From Macrostomum hystrix (taxonomy: Eukaryota; Animalia; Platyhelminthes), in NCBI GenBank assembly GCA_950097015.1, contig CATNEN010000039.1:186001-250000 (forward strand): DNA of 64,000 nt, given 5' to 3'. This document shows, one piece after another, positions 3,760-36,938 of this stretch. The position numbers and the translations under genes were made by a program. Positions within the stretch are counted from its first letter, which is position 1. Each line of letters opens with the position of its first letter. A model generated the notes under the pieces. The model ran no database searches and was not told where the DNA came from. It worked only from the letters and a program-made list of their open reading frames with translations.

Positions 3760-4356
3760 ATGAAGGCTGCGACAAGGAATGCTACATTTGAAGTCTGCAC
3801 CACCTGCAACAAGTGCGTTCTTGGTGGAATAAAGGCAAAGCAGCACGCAAACTGTTCAACGACAAATTGGTTGGCATGCTGGCAATGCGGCATCGTGCAG
3901 CAACTGGTTGGCAGAGGGACAGCAAACCAATTTTTGAAGACTCATGCCAGCCATGCAATGCTAGCAAGGGGCGATGCGGGCAGCAAGGACTGCCGGCGAA
4001 TGATCATGCACGAGGCGCGAAAGCTGAGACAGAGGCATTCGGCAGCCAGTGGAGCTCTTAGCCAAGTCATCCGGGACGTCATCAGCGGCAGTGCCAACAG
4101 TTCTGGAGAGGAATTTCAACATCAGCCACTAAGGGTTCCTGAAATTCGTGGCAAAAGGATGGAGCTTTACGGCTCCAGTCCTATGCTGATTGAGGAGAGC
4201 TCCTTTAATGGTGAAGATGAGCAGCTTCAGGCTGACACGGCTGGTGGCGCACCGAGGGAAATCCACAACTCCAGCCCCGTGCTGATGGTGTAAGGCTCTG
4301 AATGTGCTGGCGAGCATGTAGATGCTGTCCCTGTCAATGATCTACCTGCTCAACCT
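3760..4356 (+). pseudogene. Degraded Cys/His-rich ORF interrupted by the LINE cluster
   Basis: ORF 3760-4293 has CxxC pairs (CTTC, CWQC) and His residues. The same frame continues past the TAA as GSECAGEHVDAVPVNDLPAQP up to the insertion point at 4356. Confidence 0.35.
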
Positions 4357-4754
4357 TTCTTTCTTTTTTTTTCCACGGCGCGCCCGAGCCGGAGAACCGA
4401 TAAGGGCGGGGGCGCTAGAGTCGCCCCATACTGCGCAGGAGCTCGATGACCGCGGCCGGGTTCTCCATCAAGTTCTCGGCCGGGATTCCGCGTAGGGCAC
4501 GGTGGCGGTCGCCTCTTGGGCAATGGAGGACGACGTGTTCAACACTGTCCACCTCGCTGCAGTCGGGGCACAGTGGGGACTCGTCGACGCCGAGACGGTA
4601 GCGGGTTTTTCTGTCGATCATACTGGCGCCCGCGTGTAGTTGGTTGACCAGGACCTGTTGCTTCCGCGGCAGGCCCTGGGGCGGGCTCCAGAAAGGGCCG
4701 ACTGCTGTGGTATCCAGGTCGCGTCGGCAGCGTCGGGCGGCTGCTCTGGCTCTA
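4357..4754 (-). mobile_element. 3' fragment of an Ingi/I-group non-LTR element (CCHC C-terminus, 3' UTR, A-rich tail)
   Basis: The minus-strand peptide ...NQLHAGASMIDRKTRYRLGVDESPLCPDCSEVDSVEHVVLHCPRG...LLRSMGRL* aligns by eye to the C-terminus of the 4644-9101 ORF. The tail is GTGGAAAAAAAAAGAAAGAA, followed by AGGTTGAGCAGG. Confidence 0.9.
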
Positions 4755-4800
4755 GGAGACGACGTCCACGACGTGCCCCTGGAGAGGACTAACGGTCTCC
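4755..4800 (+). ncRNA. HDV-like ribozyme core (own P1 5' strand missing)
   Basis: P2 GGAGAC/GTCTCC, P3 ACG/CGT, L3 TCCACGA, P1-3' (G)CCCCT, P1.1 GG, J4/2 CTAA. P4 is reduced to AGAGGA. Confidence 0.75.
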
Positions 4801-7800
4801 CCAACCACCGAGTCTGCGCAGACTCCGACATCGATAGTGAACTGATACAAGTGCTGCGTCTCCGTGGAGGCAACGCCAACGACAACCCCAGCGCCAAGCG
4901 TCCAAGGACCCGTCGGTCAGCACGCAAGCGCAGAGGGCGCGACCGGAGGTCTCAAGCAGAGCCGACTCAAGAGCTCCGCGCTCTTCAGTTCAATTCTAAC
5001 GGACTGAAGGCCCGCATGACGGAGCTGAGTCATTGGCTCGCGACACACCGCCCGGCCGTCGCCCTGATCCAGGAGACAAAGCTGGTCAAGGACGAGGATT
5101 TCACCCCTCCCGCGAACTACTGCGTCGCCGCTCGGGTCGACGGGATCCCGTACCTCAACGACGCTGAAAGTGTTAACCAGGATGCCCAGCCGCGTCTGGA
5201 TGGTGCTCAACCACGCGCGGCTGACGACCAGCCGGACACCTCCGACGATACCGGCGGACCGTCGATGCGCGTTGCTGGAAGGCTTGTGGCCAGAACTACG
5301 TGTCGCCTCCGGTTCCCAGACGACCGTAGCAACTGGTGCCGAGGCTGTCGCTCCCGCCGCACCGCTTGCTCCGAGCGGGACAACCCGTTCCCACATGCGC
5401 TAATTCAACCGCCAGACGGGGCCAAGCCCAGTGATGCGTTGGGGCGCAATAGGACGGCGTCGCCCCCGGCCGTTAACACCAAGAAACAAAAAAAGACGAC
5501 CGGCAGGGGCGGAGTCATCACCCTGGTGCGCCTCGACGTTCGGTACAGCAACCTTCCGCCTATCCCACAAGACCAGGACAAACTGGACGCTGCTGCTATC
5601 ACCATCCACCCCGTAGGCCGCGCGCCAGTCCAAATTGTCAACGTTTACGCGCCGCCTGCGAGTGCCCAGCGCCACGACAATTGGACACCGAACCTCGCAC
5701 TCCTCCCAACGAATGACACCACGGTGATCGGAGGGGACTTCAACGGCCATGGCAGCTGGGACGGCTGGGTCGATGAGGACGAGAGGGGCCACTCGATCGA
5801 ACACTGGTGCTCTGCTAACCATCTCCAAATTTGCAATGGTGCCGCACACACCCGCAGCAGCCCAAGCAGCGGCTCCCGCAGCTCCCCGGACCTGACGCTC
5901 GCCAGTGAGCGCCTGGCAGCGAACATCGCCAACGGCTGGAGGACGGAGCGTGATATGGGCAGCGACCACCTGCCAATCACGTTCCCGCTGACACGGTTAC
6001 GCCAATGCCGTGACACCCGCCGCCGTACCCGCTGGAGCTTTCGCAAAGCCCAATGGACCGCCTTCCAGCAGCACCTCGATGAACTCCAGGGCCCGCAAGC
6101 CTGGGGCAGCATCGAGCAGCGACACGCCGCGTTTTGCAGTGACATCCTTGAAGCAGCGGCCCTCGCGATACCCCGCGGCAGTCCTTCGAACCACAGGCCA
6201 CCTTTCTGGAACTCCAACTGCGAAAAAGCCCGAGACAACTGCAACCAGAAGCGGAAAGAAGCCGAAGCCATGCCAAATCCTCAGAGCTTAGCCGACTACA
6301 ACCGGGCCAGACACGAGGCGGGAAACACCATCCGCAAAGAACGCCGCGAATACCTCGAAGACCGGGCACAACACCTCACCGTCGGCAGCGACCTCTTCCA
6401 ATTTCTCCGCGCCACGCGAGGCGACAGGGCACCACAGCGCGGCAAGGTGGACATCGCCCGCACTGCGCCAGATGGGTCGGACCTTCGCCCAGCCCGTACC
6501 GATAAAGAAAAAGCGGACACCTTTTGCCAGCACTATGCCTCCGTCGCCAGAGTGCGCCGCCGCAAGACGGACGCTCCCGTCCGGGATGTCGCTAAGATGG
6601 CCCGCAAGAATCCGGTAACCACTGCTGTCCCCTTCTCCATGGCTGAACTCCACGCTGCCATCCGTCGCCTAAAATCAGGCAAGAGCCCAGGTCCTGACGG
6701 CATCCACAATGAGATGCTCAAGCGGCTCAGCACCCGGTTCGACCAACGTTTACTCGACCTAATCAATGCTACCTGGACTAACAAGCAATGTCCGCGCAGC
6801 TGGCGGCTGGCGACCATCATCCCGATCGCAAAAAAGGGGAAGGACCCGAAGCTTGTGGCCTCCTACAGGCCAGTGGCCCTCACGAGCTGCGTTGCTAAGT
6901 GTGCGGAGCGTATGGTGTTACAACGCCTGCAACATGAACTTGAATCTAAGGGCCTGCTCTCGCCGGCCCAAGCTGGGTTCCGCCGCGGACGTAGCACGGA
7001 GGAACAACTGGCGCGTGTCTGCCAAGACATTTTTGACGGCCTCGAGCGCTCCCCGGCCTTCCGGAGCATCCTCAGCTGCCAGGATTTCAAGAGCGCGTAC
7101 GAATCTGTCTGGAAAGAGGCCCTGACCTACAAGATGGTCCGGCTCGGCATCGATGCCAACACGATCAGCTGGACGGTCGCTTTCCTCGAAGATCGCAGAG
7201 CTACGGTGTGCTGGAACGGCACCATGAGCAGCCAACGCACTTTTCGGGAGGGTCTGCCACAAGGGTCGGTGCTGGCCCCGACCCTCTGGAACATCTTCGT
7301 CAACGATCTTGCCACAGACGTTACCGAGGCATCTCCCAACTGCGGAATAAGCCTGTACGCGGACGATTCGGCGCTCCTGGCCACACAACCATCCCTGCTC
7401 AAGTGTGCCGAGGTTCTCCAACCAGCTCTGGATGCCGTGACCAGCTGGTGCTCCCGCTGGAAGATCGAATTAAGTACCAACAAGTGCTGCTACTGCACGT
7501 TCACCCTTGCTCCGAATGAGGTCAATGGGAAGGTCCGGGTCCCGCTCCAGCTCGGCAATGAGCCTCTCAACTTCGACCCGAATCCCAGGTTCCTTGGCTT
7601 GGTTCTCGACGGCCAACTCAACTTCACGGCCCACGCTGCTGATGTCCGTAAGCGCATGAGCCAACGCCGCCGAGCCCTGGCTAGCCTCGCGAGCAGGAAG
7701 GCCTGTGCCTCCCAGAATGTCCTACGCACTGCCTACCTGGCGACCATCCGTGCCGTCGCCGACCATGGCTGCGGCATCTGGGGAGCGAGCGCCGCGCCGA

Positions 7801-9101
7801 GTACCAAATTGTTAATAGAGCAGCAGCAGAACGCTTGTGCGCGCATCATCACCGGATGCCCGCAGCTCACTCGCTCTACGAACCTCCTAGCCGCAGCGAA
7901 CCTACCGCCTTTTGGACACGTGATCCTTGAGCGCGCCGCACTCCTCCGCGAACGCGTCCTCCGCCTGCCAGACGACGTCCCGGCCCACGACTCCGCAGAG
8001 CGCATCACCCGCAGCAGGCTCCTCAATCGCGCTTTTGAAAGTGCCAATCGTCGCCAGGAACCGACCATCAATCCTCTGCTTCTAAATGACTATCGTCGTC
8101 CGTTCCGAGGTTGCTGGCGTCGCGTGGCTCTTGAGCTCACTGAGGCCGCCCATCTTGAGGCCCTTCCACGCGAGCCATACCCGCAGCCGACCCCCGAGAT
8201 CAACTGCCTGATGGACAATCCACGGATCCACTTCAACCTGGCGCTCACCGCTTTGTGCGCCCGCTATCTCCCGACGAGCATCCGACGCGACCGGGCGCTG
8301 AACTTCCTTGCCGATCTCCAACCGACGGACATCGACGTCTGGACCGACGGCTCCGTCAGGGACGGCACCTCGGATGCCTGGGGCGCCGCCGTTATCAACA
8401 CCCGCAGGTGGGGTACCATTATTGCCGCCCCTGCCGGCCGGGTTGCTTGCTCCTTCCAGGCAGAGATATGCGCGATACGGGCGGCCCTCGATTACATCAG
8501 ACAGCTGACGCTGGACCACGGGACGTCGATCCGCATCCATAGCGACTCGCTGGCGGCGCTGGCAGCCCTTGAGCACGGCCCCTGCGAGCAGCGCTCGGCT
8601 GATGGCAGCCTTTGCTGGGCAACGCTGAGCGCCTTTCAACACAGCTGCGAGTTTGTTTGGGTCCCGGCGCACTGCGACATCCCGGGAAATGAGTTGGCCG
8701 ACCGCTACGCTAATCGCGCCCGTCTGGAACGACAGCAGGACAGGCCCATCTCTTTCCAAGCTGCTAAGGCGGCCCTTCGCCGGGCGAGAGCCGCCCTTGA
8801 CCTCGAGGTGCTGGGGCCGTGCTGGCGCTCCACCCCCAAACACCTCAGCCGTACCGAGACGGTCGCCATCAACCAGCTCAGGGCGGGATGCTCGATGCTG
8901 GCCAATTCCACCCGCCATCGTCTCGGCCTCACTGAGGACCCGCTCTGCCGCGACTGTGGCAACCTCGATACTGAAGAGCACATTCTCTTCGAGTGCCCGC
9001 GCGGCGACGGTACCCGTGTTCGCTACGACAACTGGGACGAGGCCCTGCATTTATACCCTGAACAAGTCCTCGCCCTCCTGCGCAGACTGGGGCGCCTCTG
9101 A
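4755..9101 (+). CDS. APE endonuclease - reverse transcriptase - RNase H - CCHC polyprotein
   Basis: APE motifs QFNSNG, LIQETK, GDFNGH, SPDLT, SDHLPI. RT motifs PGPDG, YRPVALTS, QAGFR, GLPQGSVLAP, YADD. RNase H motifs WTDGS, AEICAI, HSDSLA, WVPAHCDIPGNELAD. C-terminal CRDC..EHILFECP. No stops. The first ~37 codons of the track ORF (from 4644) are antisense of the neighbouring fragment. Confidence 0.95.
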   Translation, partial: GDDVHDVPLERTNGLPNHRVCADSDIDSELIQVLRLRGGNANDNPSAKRPRTRRSARKRRGRDRRSQAEPTQELRALQFNSNGLKARMTELSHWLATHRPAVALIQETKLVKDEDFTPPANYCVAARVDGIPYLNDAESVNQDAQPRLDGAQPRAADDQPDTSDDTGGPSMRVAGRLVARTTCRLRFPDDRSNWCRGCRSRRTACSERDNPFPHALIQPPDGAKPSDALGRNRTASPPAVNTKKQKKTTGRGGVITLVRLDVRYSNLPPIPQDQDKLDAAAITIHPVGRAPVQIVNVYAPPASAQRHDNWTPNLALLPTNDTTVIGGDFNGHGSWDGWVDEDERGHSIEHWCSANHLQICNGAAHTRSSPSSGSRSSPDLTLASERLAANIANGWRTERDMGSDHLPITFPLTRLRQCRDTRRRTRWSFRKAQWTAFQQHLDELQGPQAWGSIEQRHAAFCSDILEAAALAIPRGSPSNHRPPFWNSNCEKARDNCNQKRKEAEAMPNPQSLADYNRARHEAGNTIRKERREYLEDRAQHLTVGSDLFQFLRATRGDRAPQRGKVDIARTAPDGSDLRPARTDKEKADTFCQHYASVARVRRRKTDAPVRDVAKMARKNPVTTAVPFSMAELHAAIRRLKSGKSPGPDGIHNEMLKRLSTRFDQRLLDLINATWTNKQCPRSWRLATIIPIAKKGKDPKLVASYRPVALTSCVAKCAERMVLQRLQHELESKGLLSPAQAGFRRGRSTEEQLARVCQDIFDGLERSPAFRSILSCQDFKSAYESVWKEALTYKMVRLGIDANTISWTVAFLEDRRATVCWNGTMSSQRTFREGLPQGSVLAPTLWNIFVNDLATDVTEASPNCGISLYADDSALLATQPSLLKCAEVLQPALDAVTSWCSRWKIELSTNKCCYCTFTLAPNEVNGKVRVPLQLGNEPLNFDPNPRFLGLVLDGQLNFTAHAADVRKRMSQRRRALASLASRKACASQNVLRTAYLATIRAVADHGCGIWGASAAPSTKLLIEQQQNACARIITGCPQLTRSTNLLAAANLPPFGHVILERAALLRERVLRLPDDVPAHDSAERITRSRLLNRAFESANRRQEPTINPLLLNDYRRPFRGCWRRVALELTEAAHLEALPREPYPQPTPEINCLMDNPRIHFNLALTALCARYLPTSIRRDRALNFLADLQPTDIDVWTDGSVRDGTSDAWGAAVINTRRWGTIIAAPAGRVACSFQAEICAIRAALDYIRQLTLDHGTSIRIHSDSLAALAALEHGPCEQRSADGSLCWATLSAFQHSCEFVWVPAHCDIPGNELADRYANRARLERQQDRPISFQAAKAALRRARAALDLEVLGPCWRSTPKHLSRTETVAINQLRAGCSMLANSTRHRLGLTEDPLCRDCGNLDTEEHILFECPRGDGTRVRYDNWDEALHLYPEQVLALLRRLGRL

Positions 9102-9194
9102 GCGCTCCTCCTCCTCGCTGCCTGTAGCAGCTTTGGGGACGGTGGATTCAGAAGAAGAAGAAGAAGAAGAAGCAGCAGTAGCAGGTTGAGCAGG

Positions 9195-9305
9195 GGGGGA
9201 CCGGGCCGACCCGGTGCGTGAGTATACCATCATACCCACGCGGCAAGTGACTCCCTCCACGAGGGGCCCCTGGACGGCACACCACCGTTGCCGACGAAAT
9301 GTCAC
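9195..9305 (+). ncRNA. Complete HDV-like ribozyme
   Basis: P1 GGGGG/CCCCT with G-U at the predicted cleavage site. J1/2 hairpins CCGGG/CCCGG and GCGTG/CACGC. P2 GTGAC/GTCAC, P3 CCC/GGG, L3 TCCACGA, P1.1 GG, P4 CGGCA/TGCCG, J4/2 CGAA. Confidence 0.8.
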
Positions 9306-9492
9306 ACCCTTCAGGGATACTGCGCAAAACGAGGAGATCGACCAGGACGCGTCCGAGGAGCTGAACCTTGTGATGCGTCTCAGGGGCGGGGACGCCACGG
9401 CTGGTGAGCCGAAAACGTCCAGCCGCCCGAGAAGACAGCACAGAAGGGTTAAGAGACCCGGCCCAGAGCTCCTGGTCCTGCAGCTTAACTGT
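9195..9492 (+). mobile_element. 5' fragment of a related Ingi-like element (element 2)
   Basis: Starts at GGGGG after a 12-bp TSD-like sequence. Contains a ribozyme, then ...EELNLVMRLRGG-basic tract-ELLVLQLNC (first APE motif). Breaks into AT-rich DNA at about 9492. Confidence 0.85.
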
Positions 9493-10767
9493 ACAATACA
9501 ATATAATTACAAATAAACCGAGACATTTTATCGCCATTATTCAAGGCTCCATGAATTGAAAAATTATCTTACAATTTTAACTGTACACAAAGTTCAGTGG
9601 AACCACCAAAGTAAACAAACTATTGGCAAGCCCTGACCACCTAGGCGTAGCGCACGAGTGCATCAATGATTATTCAATAATTTAAGAAGCTATTCTGAAC
9701 TTTAGGCCCATGACAGAACGGACCCTAGCAACCGTGGGACAGAAAGTTAAATTATTTTAAACTACTCGCTCGTTTCAAATATTTTGTCGCCATTGTAAGT
9801 AACAAGCCGTTACTGGTATTGTTCTATTGTTTCTACTGTTGGTGAAGTCTTAAAAGTCAAAGTCTTTGAAACTCTTGTATCCATGCCAATAATCTGGCAT
9901 CCGCGTGTGGCCTAACAAAATATGAGGACTTCCTCACTCCCACTCTGATGACGTCTAATGACGACCAAATCAGGTTTACCTCCATTCCGATTGGACAACT
10001 GGGTCCAGACTGTCTAATTGGAGGTAACTGGCTAAAACTAAACAATAAAACGACTACCATAGAGTTCAAAATGCCAACTCAGCACAATTATTACTTTTAG
10101 CTAAGGTCTTCTAAAAGCACGAAAAAATGGAACGACCGGTCCGTCGCATTGTAAAGAAGGAAATCATCCACCTCGTTCTTTACCAAGGACCAGGAAGCCG
10201 GAAGCCCGTCTACCCGAGCCCGAAGACGTACCGGCAGTACATTGTCGACGGCCTAAAGTTTGGTCCAATTTCAAGGAAGCAGGCCATTCAAATGGCGCCT
10301 GTTATGCTCGCCTTTTGGAAGTGTTCCTTTCAAGAGAGGCGACAAAACGCCTTCCAGTGAATTGACCGATTGTCAAAGACTTAACAGTAGAAGTAATCGC
10401 TTTTTACTTACAATGCTTTTTTATTCTATTCTTTTCTATTCGTATCGCTTCCATGCTTCTAATGTTTTTTGTATTTTTACTTTTATTTGAACACTGTATG
10501 TGCTACATTGTGCTAAAAGAACGGAAATAATAATGCTAATCGTTAATTGCTTTTCATAATAAAATGTCTATATGTAATAAGTCATTGTATTTTACAGGCT
10601 AATAAAATGTTTGAGTCGCAAACGAAAATAAACTATCATGTGTGTACTTGTGCAATTGTCTAATAGTTACTTTTCACCGATAGTCACCGATGCATAAAAA
10701 TTCAAATGAGAATTTGCAAGATTTGAAATCTTAAGACAAAGACAGCAGTTTGTGTGCCGTATTATGC

Positions 10768-35520: not shown

Positions 35521-36938
35521 GAAACACCGTGATTAGTCCAGCCACTCACAGTATATTTCCGCAGCTATATTTTGTTGGTTGAGCTGCTGCAGATTCAACG
35601 GCTCAGCGGTGGTGGGAAACTACTTCCAGTATTAGGCACGTGAGAAACGGTGAAATTGTACTCGCAATGAAGTCTCCTCTGGGGGCTCGCTAGAGCCTTT
35701 ATGAGCACCAGCGGAAGATTATGCTTTGATGTAGCAAACGTGTCGCCCTTAAAATTCTCGAGCCAATTTAAAAAAAAACTTTTTCTAATTAGACACAGAC
35801 AGGGACGGGCCGCTGGCTGCAGAGAGACGAGAGAGTTGGAAAACTTAATTTCTAGCTGCAAAGGATCGAGCATTTCCATTGGATCTGCCCAGTTGGTTCC
35901 AGCACCAAAGCGACCCATAGGAGACGAAGGCCAAGAAGCGTCTTGGATCTAGCCCCAGCCCGCTCTTCTGATTCTCGGGCCAACGAAGTCTCAGCGATAC
36001 AGACTGAGGTCAAGCAGGATTCATGCAGCAAAATTCGCAGAGAATGGAGACAAAGACCAGGTAGGATTCACAGAACACTATTTTTAAGCTACTGCTAAAG
36101 GGCAATCCGTTAAAAAAATTGCCGCCTCCCTTTTGGACAGCCAGGCTGCTCTGCTGGAAATGCTCAGAAGCAACAATATTTTTTTCATCGTACCGAAGTG
36201 AAGGCGCTGCACCTGCTAAGACTTTAATTAACTCCAAACATTATGAGCGAAAGTGAGAGCAAATGAGCGCAGCTTGAGCATCCTACTGCTAGTAGCAAAC
36301 TACATGTTGTCTCCACATACATGTAAACTTATAATGCACACTTGAATGTCAACTAAAGTCAAGACAAAATTTAGTCCAGTCGCAAAAAGCAGAGCTAAAG
36401 TTATTTTACGAGTAAATTTTGAATAATATCAACAAGACAAAGAACTAATTTGTTACATCAGTTACCTGGTACCTGGTACCTAGTCTTTATTTTCCTTTAT
36501 CAGCAAACCCTAGAGAAGGGGATAAAAATTTCATAGAAATGTGAAAAACAATAGGAAAACAATCAATTCAGAACGATATTCGATGCAAAAGTATTTCTGC
36601 CTAATCAGTTTTTAAACCAAAAAAGCTCTGTCCTATTCTATAAATTGTTTATTGAGTACGTACAAATACATACAAACTTCCAATTACCCAGATTTTTAGC
36701 TACTAGGCCCATATGAATGCTGACTTTTTACATGCCGATCAAAGTAAATACGTAAGTGGAGCCTAGTGGAGCCTCAAGCAGATATGCAGGCTCCATCCAA
36801 GGGCTTCAATCATTTTTTTTCTCTCTCTGTCCGTGTGTGTGTGTGTGTATGTGTGTGTGTGTGAGCTTGTGTATCAGACTAGTTTCTCTAGAAGTTGGAG
36901 ACATTCCAGAGACGATGGTGGACAGAATTTTAAGCACA

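What the first reader, a model, noticed from the sequence alone, without database searches (positions are those of the whole stretch)
4830..9492. Ubiquitin C-terminus mimic (LRLRGG) before the endonuclease in two diverged retrotransposons: candidate host-DUB processing site
Seen: element 1 encodes DSDIDSELIQVLRLRGG|NANDNPSAKRPRTRR..ELRALQFNSNG (motif 4851-4871). Element 2 encodes EEIDQDASEELNLVMRLRGG|DATAGEPKTSSRPRR..ELLVLQLNC (motif 9367-9390). The flanks are otherwise barely alignable and the RGG codons differ (CGT GGA GGC vs AGG GGC GGG), so the peptide appears to be under selection. Both share the order acidic leader, RLRGG, basic NLS-like tract, first APE motif. Known: ubiquitin ends LHLVLRLRGG and deubiquitinases cut after GG; some accept bare RLRGG peptides. 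Ingi/L1Tc-type elements carry a 2A ribosome-skipping peptide at this same position, and none is present here. Inference: this family may use a minimal ubiquitin-tail mimic instead of 2A, letting a host protease release the RT protein with a defined N-terminus. The released GG-ended leader could also bind ubiquitin-tail readers. No ubiquitin fold lies upstream. I cannot confirm novelty without a literature search.
Basis: partly seen in the sequence, partly recalled or inferred. Interest (0 to 1): 0.9.

Follow-up and report, generated by a model that had tools for sequence, protein, structure and literature searches.

The report
Ubiquitin-tail cut signal in flatworm LINEs
A group of jumping genes in the flatworm Macrostomum keeps the last ten residues of ubiquitin, without the rest of ubiquitin, just ahead of its DNA-cutting enzyme, exactly where related elements carry a viral-type 2A peptide. 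It is most likely a site where a host ubiquitin-trimming protease frees the enzyme from a junk leader, but cutting has not been tested.

Summary
LRLRGG lies at 4854-4871 and MRLRGG at 9373-9390. Each sits 34-45 residues before the first endonuclease motif of a single-ORF LINE (endonuclease, reverse transcriptase, RNase H).

The genome is Macrostomum hystrix. At least seven diverged subfamilies there keep L-x-x-V-[LM]-R-[LI]-R-G-G. So do M. lignano copies and one metagenomic relative. Family B has LHLVLRLRGG, the exact last ten residues of ubiquitin.

At V, R, R, G, G there are 93 synonymous and 0 nonsynonymous pairwise codon differences. The flanks change freely, so the peptide is under selection.

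No ubiquitin fold lies upstream. The "acidic leader" is the translation of a 5' HDV-like ribozyme, supported by compensatory base changes. It has no conserved ATG, yet its frame stays open from base 1.

The motif-bearing families form one clade whose sister and neighbours carry 2A in the same slot. In the census, 30 sequences had the motif, 38 had 2A and none had both. The elements insert into CAG/CAA repeats, in phase with the Gln codons.

Cleavage after GG by a host deubiquitinase is the best reading (about 0.5). It is untested, and deubiquitinases cut foldless LRGG peptides poorly.

This scan reported the same motif before, on another copy in this genome (s1-845632).

The parts
4350..4690 (-). 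5'-truncated 3' end of a related (family C type) element: C-terminal zinc-knuckle part of the ORF (...LRSMGRL*), 3' UTR and an A/GAAA-rich tail. It forms the left flank of element 1.
   Evidence: zf-RVT, weak; same C-terminus and 3' UTR as the full-length family C copy L047
4748..4800 (+). 5' end of element 1 (family A). It is a minimal HDV-like ribozyme without P4: P2a 4755-4760, P3a 4762-4764, L3 4765-4771, P3b 4772-4774, P1b 4775-4780, P1.1 4781-4782, J4/2 4783-4794, P2b 4795-4800. In this copy the P1 5' strand is damaged (GGCTCT in place of GGGGGC).
4842..4871 (+). Ubiquitin-like decapeptide LIQVLRLRGG (8/10 residues identical to ubiquitin's LHLVLRLRGG). The proposed cut lies after 4871.
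4872..4973 (+). Arg/Lys-rich linker of 34 residues (NANDNPSAKRPRTRRSARKRRGRDRR...) between GG and the first endonuclease motif.
4974..5978 (+). AP-endonuclease domain. It carries an inserted CX10WCX2CX6C knuckle at 5301-5369.
6831..7526 (+). Reverse transcriptase domain.
8328..8720 (+). RNase H domain. The ORF runs on through a C-terminal Cys/His knuckle to the stop codon at 9099-9101.
9102..9171 (+). 3' UTR of element 1 and its (GAA)7 tail (9151-9171).
9172..9192 (+). CAG-rich remnant of the target repeat (GCAGCAGTAGCAGG...), lying between the tail of element 1 and the 5' end of element 2.
9197..9305 (+). 5' end of element 2 (family C). It is an HDV-like ribozyme whose P1 5' strand is split, GGG plus GGC, by two hairpins. 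L3 is 9256-9262, P1b 9266-9271, P1.1 9272-9273, J4/2 GACGAAAT, P2b 9301-9305. It is preceded by 4 extra G (9193-9196).
9361..9390 (+). Ubiquitin-like decapeptide LNLVMRLRGG of element 2.
9391..9488 (+). Basic linker and first endonuclease motif (LLVLQLNC) of element 2. The element breaks off here. This copy also has frameshifts in its leader relative to intact family C copies.

Best explanation
The motif is a foldless copy of ubiquitin's last ten residues (beta5 strand plus the LRLRGG tail). It is kept by selection in one clade of single-ORF LINEs of Macrostomum flatworms that target CAG repeats.

The element RNA begins with an HDV-like self-cleaving ribozyme and has no conserved AUG. The reading frame is nevertheless open from the first base. 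Whatever is translated first is therefore a leader dictated by RNA structure, or, on uncut co-transcripts, by the host's poly-Gln codons.

The ubiquitin tail lies between that leader and the basic linker and endonuclease. I propose that a host ubiquitin- or NEDD8-specific protease cuts after GG and frees the endonuclease-RT protein with a defined N-terminus. Sister lineages do the same job co-translationally with a 2A peptide.

Shown: the motif, selection on it, its position, the swap with 2A, the ribozyme fold (by covariation), the open AUG-less frame and the CAG target. Inferred: the cleavage, the enzyme and where translation starts.
For: 1. Conservation. Seven subfamilies in the genome, M. 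lignano PAA56246/PAA91395 and the metagenomic P0001 all carry the motif.
2. Selection. V, R, R, G, G are invariant, with 93 synonymous and 0 nonsynonymous pairwise differences, while the flanks change freely.
3. Likeness to ubiquitin. Family B matches ubiquitin 10/10. The profile's leader part hits every repeat of polyubiquitins.
4. The same slot as 2A. 30 sequences have the motif only, 38 have 2A only and none have both. 2A-bearing LINE families occur in the same genome.
5. Phylogeny. On the endonuclease+RT tree the motif families are one clade (SH-aLRT 100). Its sister, P0188, carries 2A (99), and further 2A lineages surround it.
6. A reason to cut.
   - The leader is a ribozyme. P2, P3 and P1.1 are paired in 60/60 cells, 6 of 10 pairs carry compensatory changes and 0/500 shuffles reach this. 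P1 pairs 6/6 from element base 1 in all families.
   - The leader has no conserved ATG.
   - The ORF frame is the only stop-free frame in 7/7 families.
   - Leader length is 2 mod 3 in all families, over a range of 107-230 nt.
7. The residue after GG is never Pro.
8. Precedent. Ubiquitin inserts in cytopathogenic pestiviruses act as processing signals cut by cellular ubiquitin C-terminal hydrolases (PMC8310069). The L1Tc/ingi clade has a 5' HDV-like ribozyme (PMC4035085), and a 2A peptide in the N-terminal region of its ORF (PMC3708506).
Against: No cleavage has been observed. Deubiquitinases hydrolyse LRGG tetrapeptides 'very poorly', and efficient catalysis needs the ubiquitin surface exosite (PMC7477763). 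Here there is no ubiquitin fold, and the family A leader is too short to hold one. No RNA run was available to show the transcripts, and the runs that could be laid were uninformative contigs. Outside Macrostomum-like sources the motif was not found in 1.84 billion representatives, so its generality is unknown. The ORF shows no protease domain that could cut it in cis.
Confidence: 0.5

Rival explanations
1. The motif is a retained piece of a once-captured ubiquitin coding sequence, or a mimic of one. It would work without being cut, for example as a docking site for ubiquitin-tail-binding proteins or the proteasome, or as a regulator of the protein's turnover.
For: The identity to ubiquitin is up to 10/10. 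There is no fold that would make it a good deubiquitinase substrate. Poor hydrolysis of foldless LRGG is documented (PMC7477763).
Against: Known readers of the ubiquitin tail need a free GG carboxyl end, which itself requires cleavage. The position, exactly in the 2A slot between a junk leader and the enzyme, fits a separator. The strict GG is the hallmark of a scissile site.
Confidence: 0.15
2. The motif is simply the start of the Arg-rich nuclear-import or nucleic-acid-binding tract (a single RGG box). Its likeness to ubiquitin is convergent and has no functional meaning.
For: It is followed directly by a highly basic tract in all families. RGG motifs bind RNA (general knowledge).
Against: The basic tract itself is not conserved in sequence, whereas V-x-R-x-R-G-G and the hydrophobic L-x-x-V upstream are invariant or nearly so. 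RGG boxes normally come as repeats. A 10/10 match to ubiquitin in family B is not expected from a generic basic motif.
Confidence: 0.12
3. The peptide is a new kind of co-translational recoding or stalling signal. It would replace 2A mechanistically, acting in the ribosome exit tunnel, with no protease involved.
For: It replaces 2A at the same position in a sister clade.
Against: It bears no resemblance to D(V/I)ExNPGP. The 2A papers searched do not mention ubiquitin or a ubiquitin-like motif. The exact ubiquitin tail points to ubiquitin-processing enzymes.
Confidence: 0.08
4. The conserved block marks the translation start: ATG or CTG at the [LM] position with a Kozak-like context. Alternatively it is an RNA-level element, not a peptide signal.
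For: The [LM] codon is ATG in families C, F and G and CTG in A, B and E. No other conserved ATG exists in the leader.
Against: Family D uses CTC, which is two changes away from AUG. The residues upstream of that codon (L-x-x-V) are conserved as amino acids. The third positions of the R and G codons vary freely, which rules out an RNA motif. The frame is kept open, and in phase, all the way to base 1.
Confidence: 0.05

Closest known systems
2A/StopGo peptides in the N-terminal region of single-ORF APE-type LINEs (L1Tc, Ingi, CR1, L2, Rex1, Crack; PMC3708506, PMC3894237)
   Same: Same slot: a short conserved peptide between a leader and the endonuclease in LINEs that lack ORF1. The sister lineage and several LINE families of the same genome carry 2A there. 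The L1Tc/ingi clade also has a 5' HDV-like ribozyme (PMC4035085).
   Different: There is no D(V/I)ExNPGP motif. 2A works inside the ribosome without a protease, whereas this motif would need a host protease.
Ubiquitin-coding inserts in cytopathogenic pestiviruses (BVDV Osloss, CP1, CP Rit), used as processing signals (PMC8310069)
   Same: A host ubiquitin C-terminus is placed in front of a replicase protein, so that cellular ubiquitin C-terminal hydrolases create that protein's N-terminus.
   Different: The viral inserts are whole or nearly whole ubiquitin (CP Rit lacks only 3 residues). Here only about 10 residues remain and there is no fold. Here the signal is also a stable, old feature of a retrotransposon clade, not a sporadic recombinant.
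Natural ubiquitin fusion genes (polyubiquitin, Ub-L40, Ub-S27a)
   Same: LRLRGG is followed by a basic protein. The profile of the LINE leader picks up these proteins.
   Different: The similarity stops at 10-15 residues. The host's own ubiquitin genes lie elsewhere in the genome and none was seen next to a LINE.
HDV-like ribozymes at LINE 5' ends (R2, RTE, L1Tc; PMC3774820, PMC4035085)
   Same: A nested double pseudoknot whose cut site is the element's first base. The 5' junctions are variable, with untemplated bases, as described for R2.
   Different: Families A and F have a minimal 54-nt form without P4. Families C, D, E and G have P1 split by two hairpins. Rfam models do not detect any of them.
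Microsatellite-specific LINEs (known from the literature; recalled from memory, not checked here)
   Same: Orientation-specific insertion into a simple repeat, with short target-site duplications.
   Different: The target here is CAG/CAA, and the insertion is locked in phase with the Gln reading frame of the repeat.

Membership tests
APE-type non-LTR retrotransposon (LINE) with RNase H | AP-endonuclease, reverse transcriptase and RNase H domains in one ORF | tested here: met
   Pfam PF03372/PF14529, PF00078 and PF00075
APE-type non-LTR retrotransposon (LINE) with RNase H | Target-site duplication and a simple-repeat 3' tail | tested here: met
   10-bp duplications in L044 and L045; (GAA)n or (GAAA)n tails
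APE-type non-LTR retrotransposon (LINE) with RNase H | Assignment to a named clade (Ingi, Vingi, I, Nimb...) by RT phylogeny with reference elements | not tested
   No named reference sequences were at hand. The tree holds only unnamed database proteins.
2A/StopGo peptide | D(V/I)ExNPGP motif upstream of the endonuclease | tested here: not met
   0 of 30 motif-bearing sequences have it; 38 relatives have it instead
Ubiquitin / ubiquitin-like domain | Beta-grasp fold of about 76 residues, detectable by profile | tested here: not met
   No Pfam ubiquitin hit at E<=10 for seven leaders. The AlphaFold2 model has pLDDT 62, pTM 0.21 and no strands. The family A leader is about 36 codons in all.
Ubiquitin / ubiquitin-like domain | C-terminal LRLRGG | tested here: met
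Ubiquitin-fusion processing signal | GG followed by a residue other than Pro | tested here: met
   N, E, H, D, D, A, D in the genome; D in M. lignano; N in P0001
Ubiquitin-fusion processing signal | Cleavage after GG by a ubiquitin-specific protease | not testable with these tools
   Needs a bench assay. No host deubiquitinase sequence could be obtained for a complex prediction.
HDV-like self-cleaving ribozyme | Nested double pseudoknot (P1, P1.1, P2, P3, optional P4) kept by covariation | tested here: met
   P2, P3 and P1.1: 60/60 cells paired, 6/10 pairs compensatory, 0/500 shuffles, and 30-43% paired when slid. P1 pairs 6/6 in all seven families. P4 hairpins differ in sequence between families (hand reading of the sequences printed).
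HDV-like self-cleaving ribozyme | Cut site at the first base of P1, which is the 5' end of the genomic copies | tested here: met
   Independent copies of families A, B, C and D all start at the G run that opens P1
HDV-like self-cleaving ribozyme | Catalytic C in J4/2 | tested here: inconclusive
   CGAA (families D, E, G, C) or CUAA (A, F, B) lies just before P2b. The comparison with HDV's C75-G-A-A is from memory.
HDV-like self-cleaving ribozyme | Match to an Rfam HDV-type model | tested here: not met
   No hit at E<=5 over 4200-9700. Such ribozymes are known to escape sequence models.
HDV-like self-cleaving ribozyme | Self-cleavage in vitro | not testable with these tools
   Bench assay needed

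The most novel reading that the evidence does not exclude
A retrotransposon clade has swapped the ribosomal 2A trick for a ten-residue, foldless ubiquitin tail. This would mean that some cellular ubiquitin/NEDD8 protease cuts a linear LRLRGG site without a ubiquitin body in vivo. Insertion is phase-locked into CAG repeats and the frame is open from base 1, so the element could also be translated as an in-frame extension of host poly-Gln proteins and then cut itself free. An M. lignano zinc-finger gene carries such a fusion. The new N-terminus (Asn, Asp, Glu or His in 8 of 9 lineages) would be an Arg/N-degron that keeps the enzyme short-lived.
Probability: 0.3. Interest if true: 0.9.

Novelty: new variant of a known kind. 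Interest (0 to 1): 0.78.

Why it matters
How single-ORF LINEs without a start codon make a working protein is an open question. 2A peptides and 5' ribozymes are the two known pieces of the answer. This clade has the ribozyme but has replaced 2A with a piece of ubiquitin. That argues the slot really is a release site, and it would be the first case of a transposable element borrowing the host's ubiquitin-processing enzymes for that purpose.

If the cut is real, it also defines a natural minimal substrate for a deubiquitinase and a compact, host-dependent alternative to 2A for co-expression. Macrostomum lignano can be made transgenic, so the test is direct. I found no paper that joins RLRGG or a ubiquitin tail with retrotransposons.

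Tried and rejected
- **Rfam scan** of 4200-9700 at E<=5: no ribozyme family, only two chance hits.
- **N-terminal homologue search** (residues 1-140): nothing.
- **The look-up of encoding contigs**: closed, so the M. lignano locus could not be read as DNA.
- **Sequencing runs**: no RNA run holds the element. The four runs laid are low-depth contigs of unknown kind and say nothing about 5' ends or expression.
- **Spliced leader as the source of the AUG**: the leader's 3' part (ending ATG) is conserved in the genome, and retro-copies headed by it exist. None is joined to this LINE. This gives no support and no refutation.
- **Start-codon reading** of the [LM] codon: rejected because of CTC in family D and the conserved residues upstream.
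- **Origin from the Ub-S27a junction** (ubiquitin tail plus basic tract): BLASTP and hhalign align only 10-15 residues.
- **Ubiquitin fold in the leader**: no Pfam hit and no AlphaFold2 fold.
- **The same ribozyme descriptor on the 2A-type loci** L028-L037: no hit. The descriptor gives about one chance hit per 64 kb strand.
- **Complex prediction with a deubiquitinase**: not run, because no host enzyme sequence could be brought in by reference.
- It was rerun from the files.

Full report
**What is in the window.** The frame 4644-9101 (+) holds an endonuclease (PF03372/PF14529), a reverse transcriptase (PF00078) and an RNase H (PF00075). LRLRGG is at 4854-4871, 34 residues before the first endonuclease motif (LRALQFNSNG, from 4974).

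After the stop (9099-9101) come a short 3' UTR, a (GAA)7 tail (9151-9171) and a CAG-rich remnant. The 5' end of a second element follows. Its MRLRGG is at 9373-9390, and it breaks off at about 9488.

On the left, 4350-4690 (minus strand) is the 5'-truncated 3' end of a third, related element. The frame that the first list shows from 4644 therefore runs over foreign sequence. Element 1 really begins near 4748-4752.

**Which genome.** The assembly has 220,453,370 bases in 42 contigs. These are exactly the figures published for Macrostomum hystrix (PMC10468722).

**Is the motif more than chance?** Two hits in one window are not significant on their own. Conservation is what counts.
- A six-frame search of the whole genome with the N-terminus of element 1 found about 25 5'-intact copies. 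They fall into seven subfamilies (A to G) whose endonuclease starts are only 45-57% identical. Every one has x-L-x-x-V-[LM]-R-[LI]-R-G-G at the same place.
- Family B reads LHLVLRLRGG, identical to the last ten residues of ubiquitin.
- In alignments of the families, the only invariant residues outside the endonuclease are V, R, R, G, G.
- Among eight family representatives these five codons show 93 synonymous and 0 nonsynonymous pairwise differences. R is coded by CGT, CGC, CGG, CGA, AGA and AGG; G by GGA, GGT and GGC. The ten codons on either side are about 24/28 nonsynonymous.
- This is selection on the peptide, not on the RNA. Decayed copies have lost the motif (RRLRGG in L014, MRLRGR in L021).

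**Outside this genome.**
- A profile of the region searched against 1.84 billion representatives hit polyubiquitins repeat by repeat through its leader part. It found one cluster with the motif in front of an endonuclease: Macrostomum lignano PAA56246/PAA91395.
- A second relative, the metagenomic P0001 (40% identical), reads ...LLSVMRLRGGNSD....
- In M. lignano the element sits in frame in a poly-Gln exon of a C2H2 zinc-finger gene. An uninterrupted paralogue (PAA93933) shows the empty site.
- Proteins that include the AUG-less leader can only enter a protein database if an upstream frame is open. These fusions are therefore a biased sample.

**No ubiquitin fold.** Pfam gives no ubiquitin hit for any of seven leaders at E<=10. 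AlphaFold2 on their alignment gives pLDDT 62, pTM 0.21 and no strands. BLASTP and hhalign align only 10-15 residues to ubiquitin fusion proteins. The family A leader has about 36 codons in all.

**What the leader really is.** All copies of a family start at the same G run. The first 54 nt of families A and F, and 71 nt of B, fold as an HDV-like nested double pseudoknot.
- P1 is bases 1-6 with 29-34 (a G1.U pair at the cut site).
- P3 has 3 bp around a 7-nt L3, U[CU]CACG[AC].
- P1.1 pairs L3 bases 2-3 with the two bases after P1.
- P2 is 9-14 with 49-54, or with 66-71 in B, which has a P4 hairpin.
- CUAA lies in J4/2.
- Families C, D, E and G have the same core with CGAA in J4/2 and P4 hairpins of unrelated sequence.
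Its 5' strand is split as GGG (bases 1-3) plus GGC by two inserted hairpins. Read that way, it pairs 6/6 in all four families.

On the alignment, P2, P3 and P1.1 are paired in 60 of 60 cells. Six of ten pairs carry compensatory changes, 0 of 500 shuffles reach this, and slid controls pair at 30-43%. My descriptor gives about one chance hit per 64 kb strand. Rfam does not see the ribozyme.

The apparently conserved leader peptides (LHEGPLD, MTKCR) are therefore translations of P3-L3-P1 and of J4/2-P2. In the window, element 1 has the core but a damaged P1 strand. Element 2 has the complete split-P1 form (9197-9305).

**The frame through the leader.** No ATG is conserved in any leader. Yet the ORF frame is the only stop-free frame from base 1 to GG in 7 of 7 families, and all 14 other frames have stops. 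The product of the shuffle probabilities is about 7e-6, although the families are related. Counted from the ribozyme's G1, leader length is 2 mod 3 in every family, over a range of 107 to 230 nt. Translation is thus expected to pass through the ribozyme sequence, whether it starts at its very 5' end or upstream on uncut co-transcripts. Where it starts is not known.

**Target.** Of 19 independent 5' junctions scored, 16 have a CAG/CAA run of 2 or more units within 25 nt upstream. These runs are always in the sense orientation. In 13 of the 16 the run is in the Gln phase of the element's ORF (about 1e-4 against one in three).

Two full-length copies show 10-bp target duplications that begin at a CAG/CAA codon boundary. 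A phase-specific first nick plus a fixed 10-bp stagger would explain the lock mechanically. That the ORF uses just this phase is either chance (one in three) or selected.

**The same slot as 2A.** The closest database relatives with intact N-termini carry D(V/I)ExNPGP followed by a basic tract and the endonuclease (P0188, P0003, P0040, P0044, P0160, P0170). Other LINE families in this same genome do too.

| Upstream of the endonuclease | Sequences |
|---|---|
| Ubiquitin tail only | 30 |
| 2A only | 38 |
| Both | 0 |
| Neither | 49 |

On a tree of endonuclease plus RT (40 rows), the ubiquitin-tail families are one clade (SH-aLRT 100). The clade needs a single change of state. Its sister is the 2A-bearing P0188 (99), and further 2A lineages lie around it.

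2A in the N-terminal region of single-ORF LINEs is known (PMC3708506, PMC3894237). The L1Tc/ingi clade also has a 5' HDV-like ribozyme (PMC4035085).

**Mechanism.**
- The best reading is that the motif is a release site. A host ubiquitin- or NEDD8-specific protease cuts after GG, removes the RNA-dictated (or host-derived) leader and gives the enzyme a defined N-terminus.
- The residue after GG is never Pro.
- The precedent is the ubiquitin insert of cytopathogenic pestiviruses, which cellular ubiquitin C-terminal hydrolases cut to make the N-terminus of NS3 (PMC8310069). Those inserts are whole or nearly whole ubiquitin.
- The main objection is biochemical. LRGG tetrapeptides are hydrolysed very poorly, and deubiquitinases need the ubiquitin surface for efficient catalysis (PMC7477763).
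- The ORF shows no protease domain of its own.
- I put the cleavage reading at about 0.5. The rivals are an uncut docking or turnover signal, part of the basic import/RNA-binding tract, an unknown recoding peptide, and a start-codon context.

**Novelty.** No paper in the library joins RLRGG or a ubiquitin tail with retrotransposons. The 2A papers searched do not mention ubiquitin. Within this scan the same motif was reported earlier, on a family B copy of this genome, with the same reading (s1-845632). The minimal ribozyme was also reported before (s1-394537). I reached both from the sequence and tested them here.

**Limits.** There is no RNA evidence. No complex prediction was run.

Noticed in passing
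window 4748-4800 and 9197-9305; loci L004, L009, L011, L015, L016, L018, L022: HDV-like ribozymes form the exact 5' ends of all seven subfamilies. Families A and F have a minimal 54-nt form without P4. Families C, D, E and G have a form whose P1 5' strand is split by two hairpins. Rfam does not detect either.
   Followed up: yes
loci L004-L024, L044, L045, L048: The elements insert orientation-specifically into CAG/CAA repeats. They make 10-bp target duplications that start at a codon boundary, which puts the ORF in phase with the Gln codons (13 of 16 junctions).
   Followed up: yes
window 5301-5369: A CX10WCX2CX6C zinc-knuckle-like insert lies inside the endonuclease domain. It is shared with the 2A-bearing sisters (P0188, P0003, P0040, P0047). 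It may be a DNA-recognition module for the repeat target.
   Followed up: partly
proteins P0036/P0186 versus P0185 (Macrostomum lignano): One paralogue of a C2H2 zinc-finger gene carries the element in frame right after a poly-Gln tract, and it is annotated as a fusion protein. Another paralogue shows the empty site.
   Followed up: partly
loci L028-L030, L034, L036, L037: Other LINE families of the same genome carry 2A peptides (LLLSGDIESNPGP, LLLSGDIEQNPGP) just before the endonuclease. Their leaders also lack an ATG.
   Followed up: partly
loci L055, L056, L058, L072, L078: A dispersed repeat starts with the complete spliced-leader sequence followed by GCTTCAACTCGCTTCG... It is probably a retroposed trans-spliced RNA family. 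The spliced-leader RNA genes themselves lie in tandem units of about 11.7 kb on contigs C15, C17 and C42.
   Followed up: no
residue after GG in all families (e.g. window 4872-4874 and 9391-9393): The residue that cleavage would expose is N, E, H, D, D, A, D (plus D in M. lignano and N in P0001). Eight of nine are destabilising in the Arg/N-degron pathway. This is a post-hoc observation.
   Followed up: no
window 3760-4293 (+): A Cys-rich 177-residue ORF with an ATG start and no family match lies upstream of the minus-strand fragment. Its nature is unknown.
   Followed up: no
window 35599-35612: The third match to the degenerate RLRGG pattern encodes RLSGG and is unrelated.
   Followed up: yes
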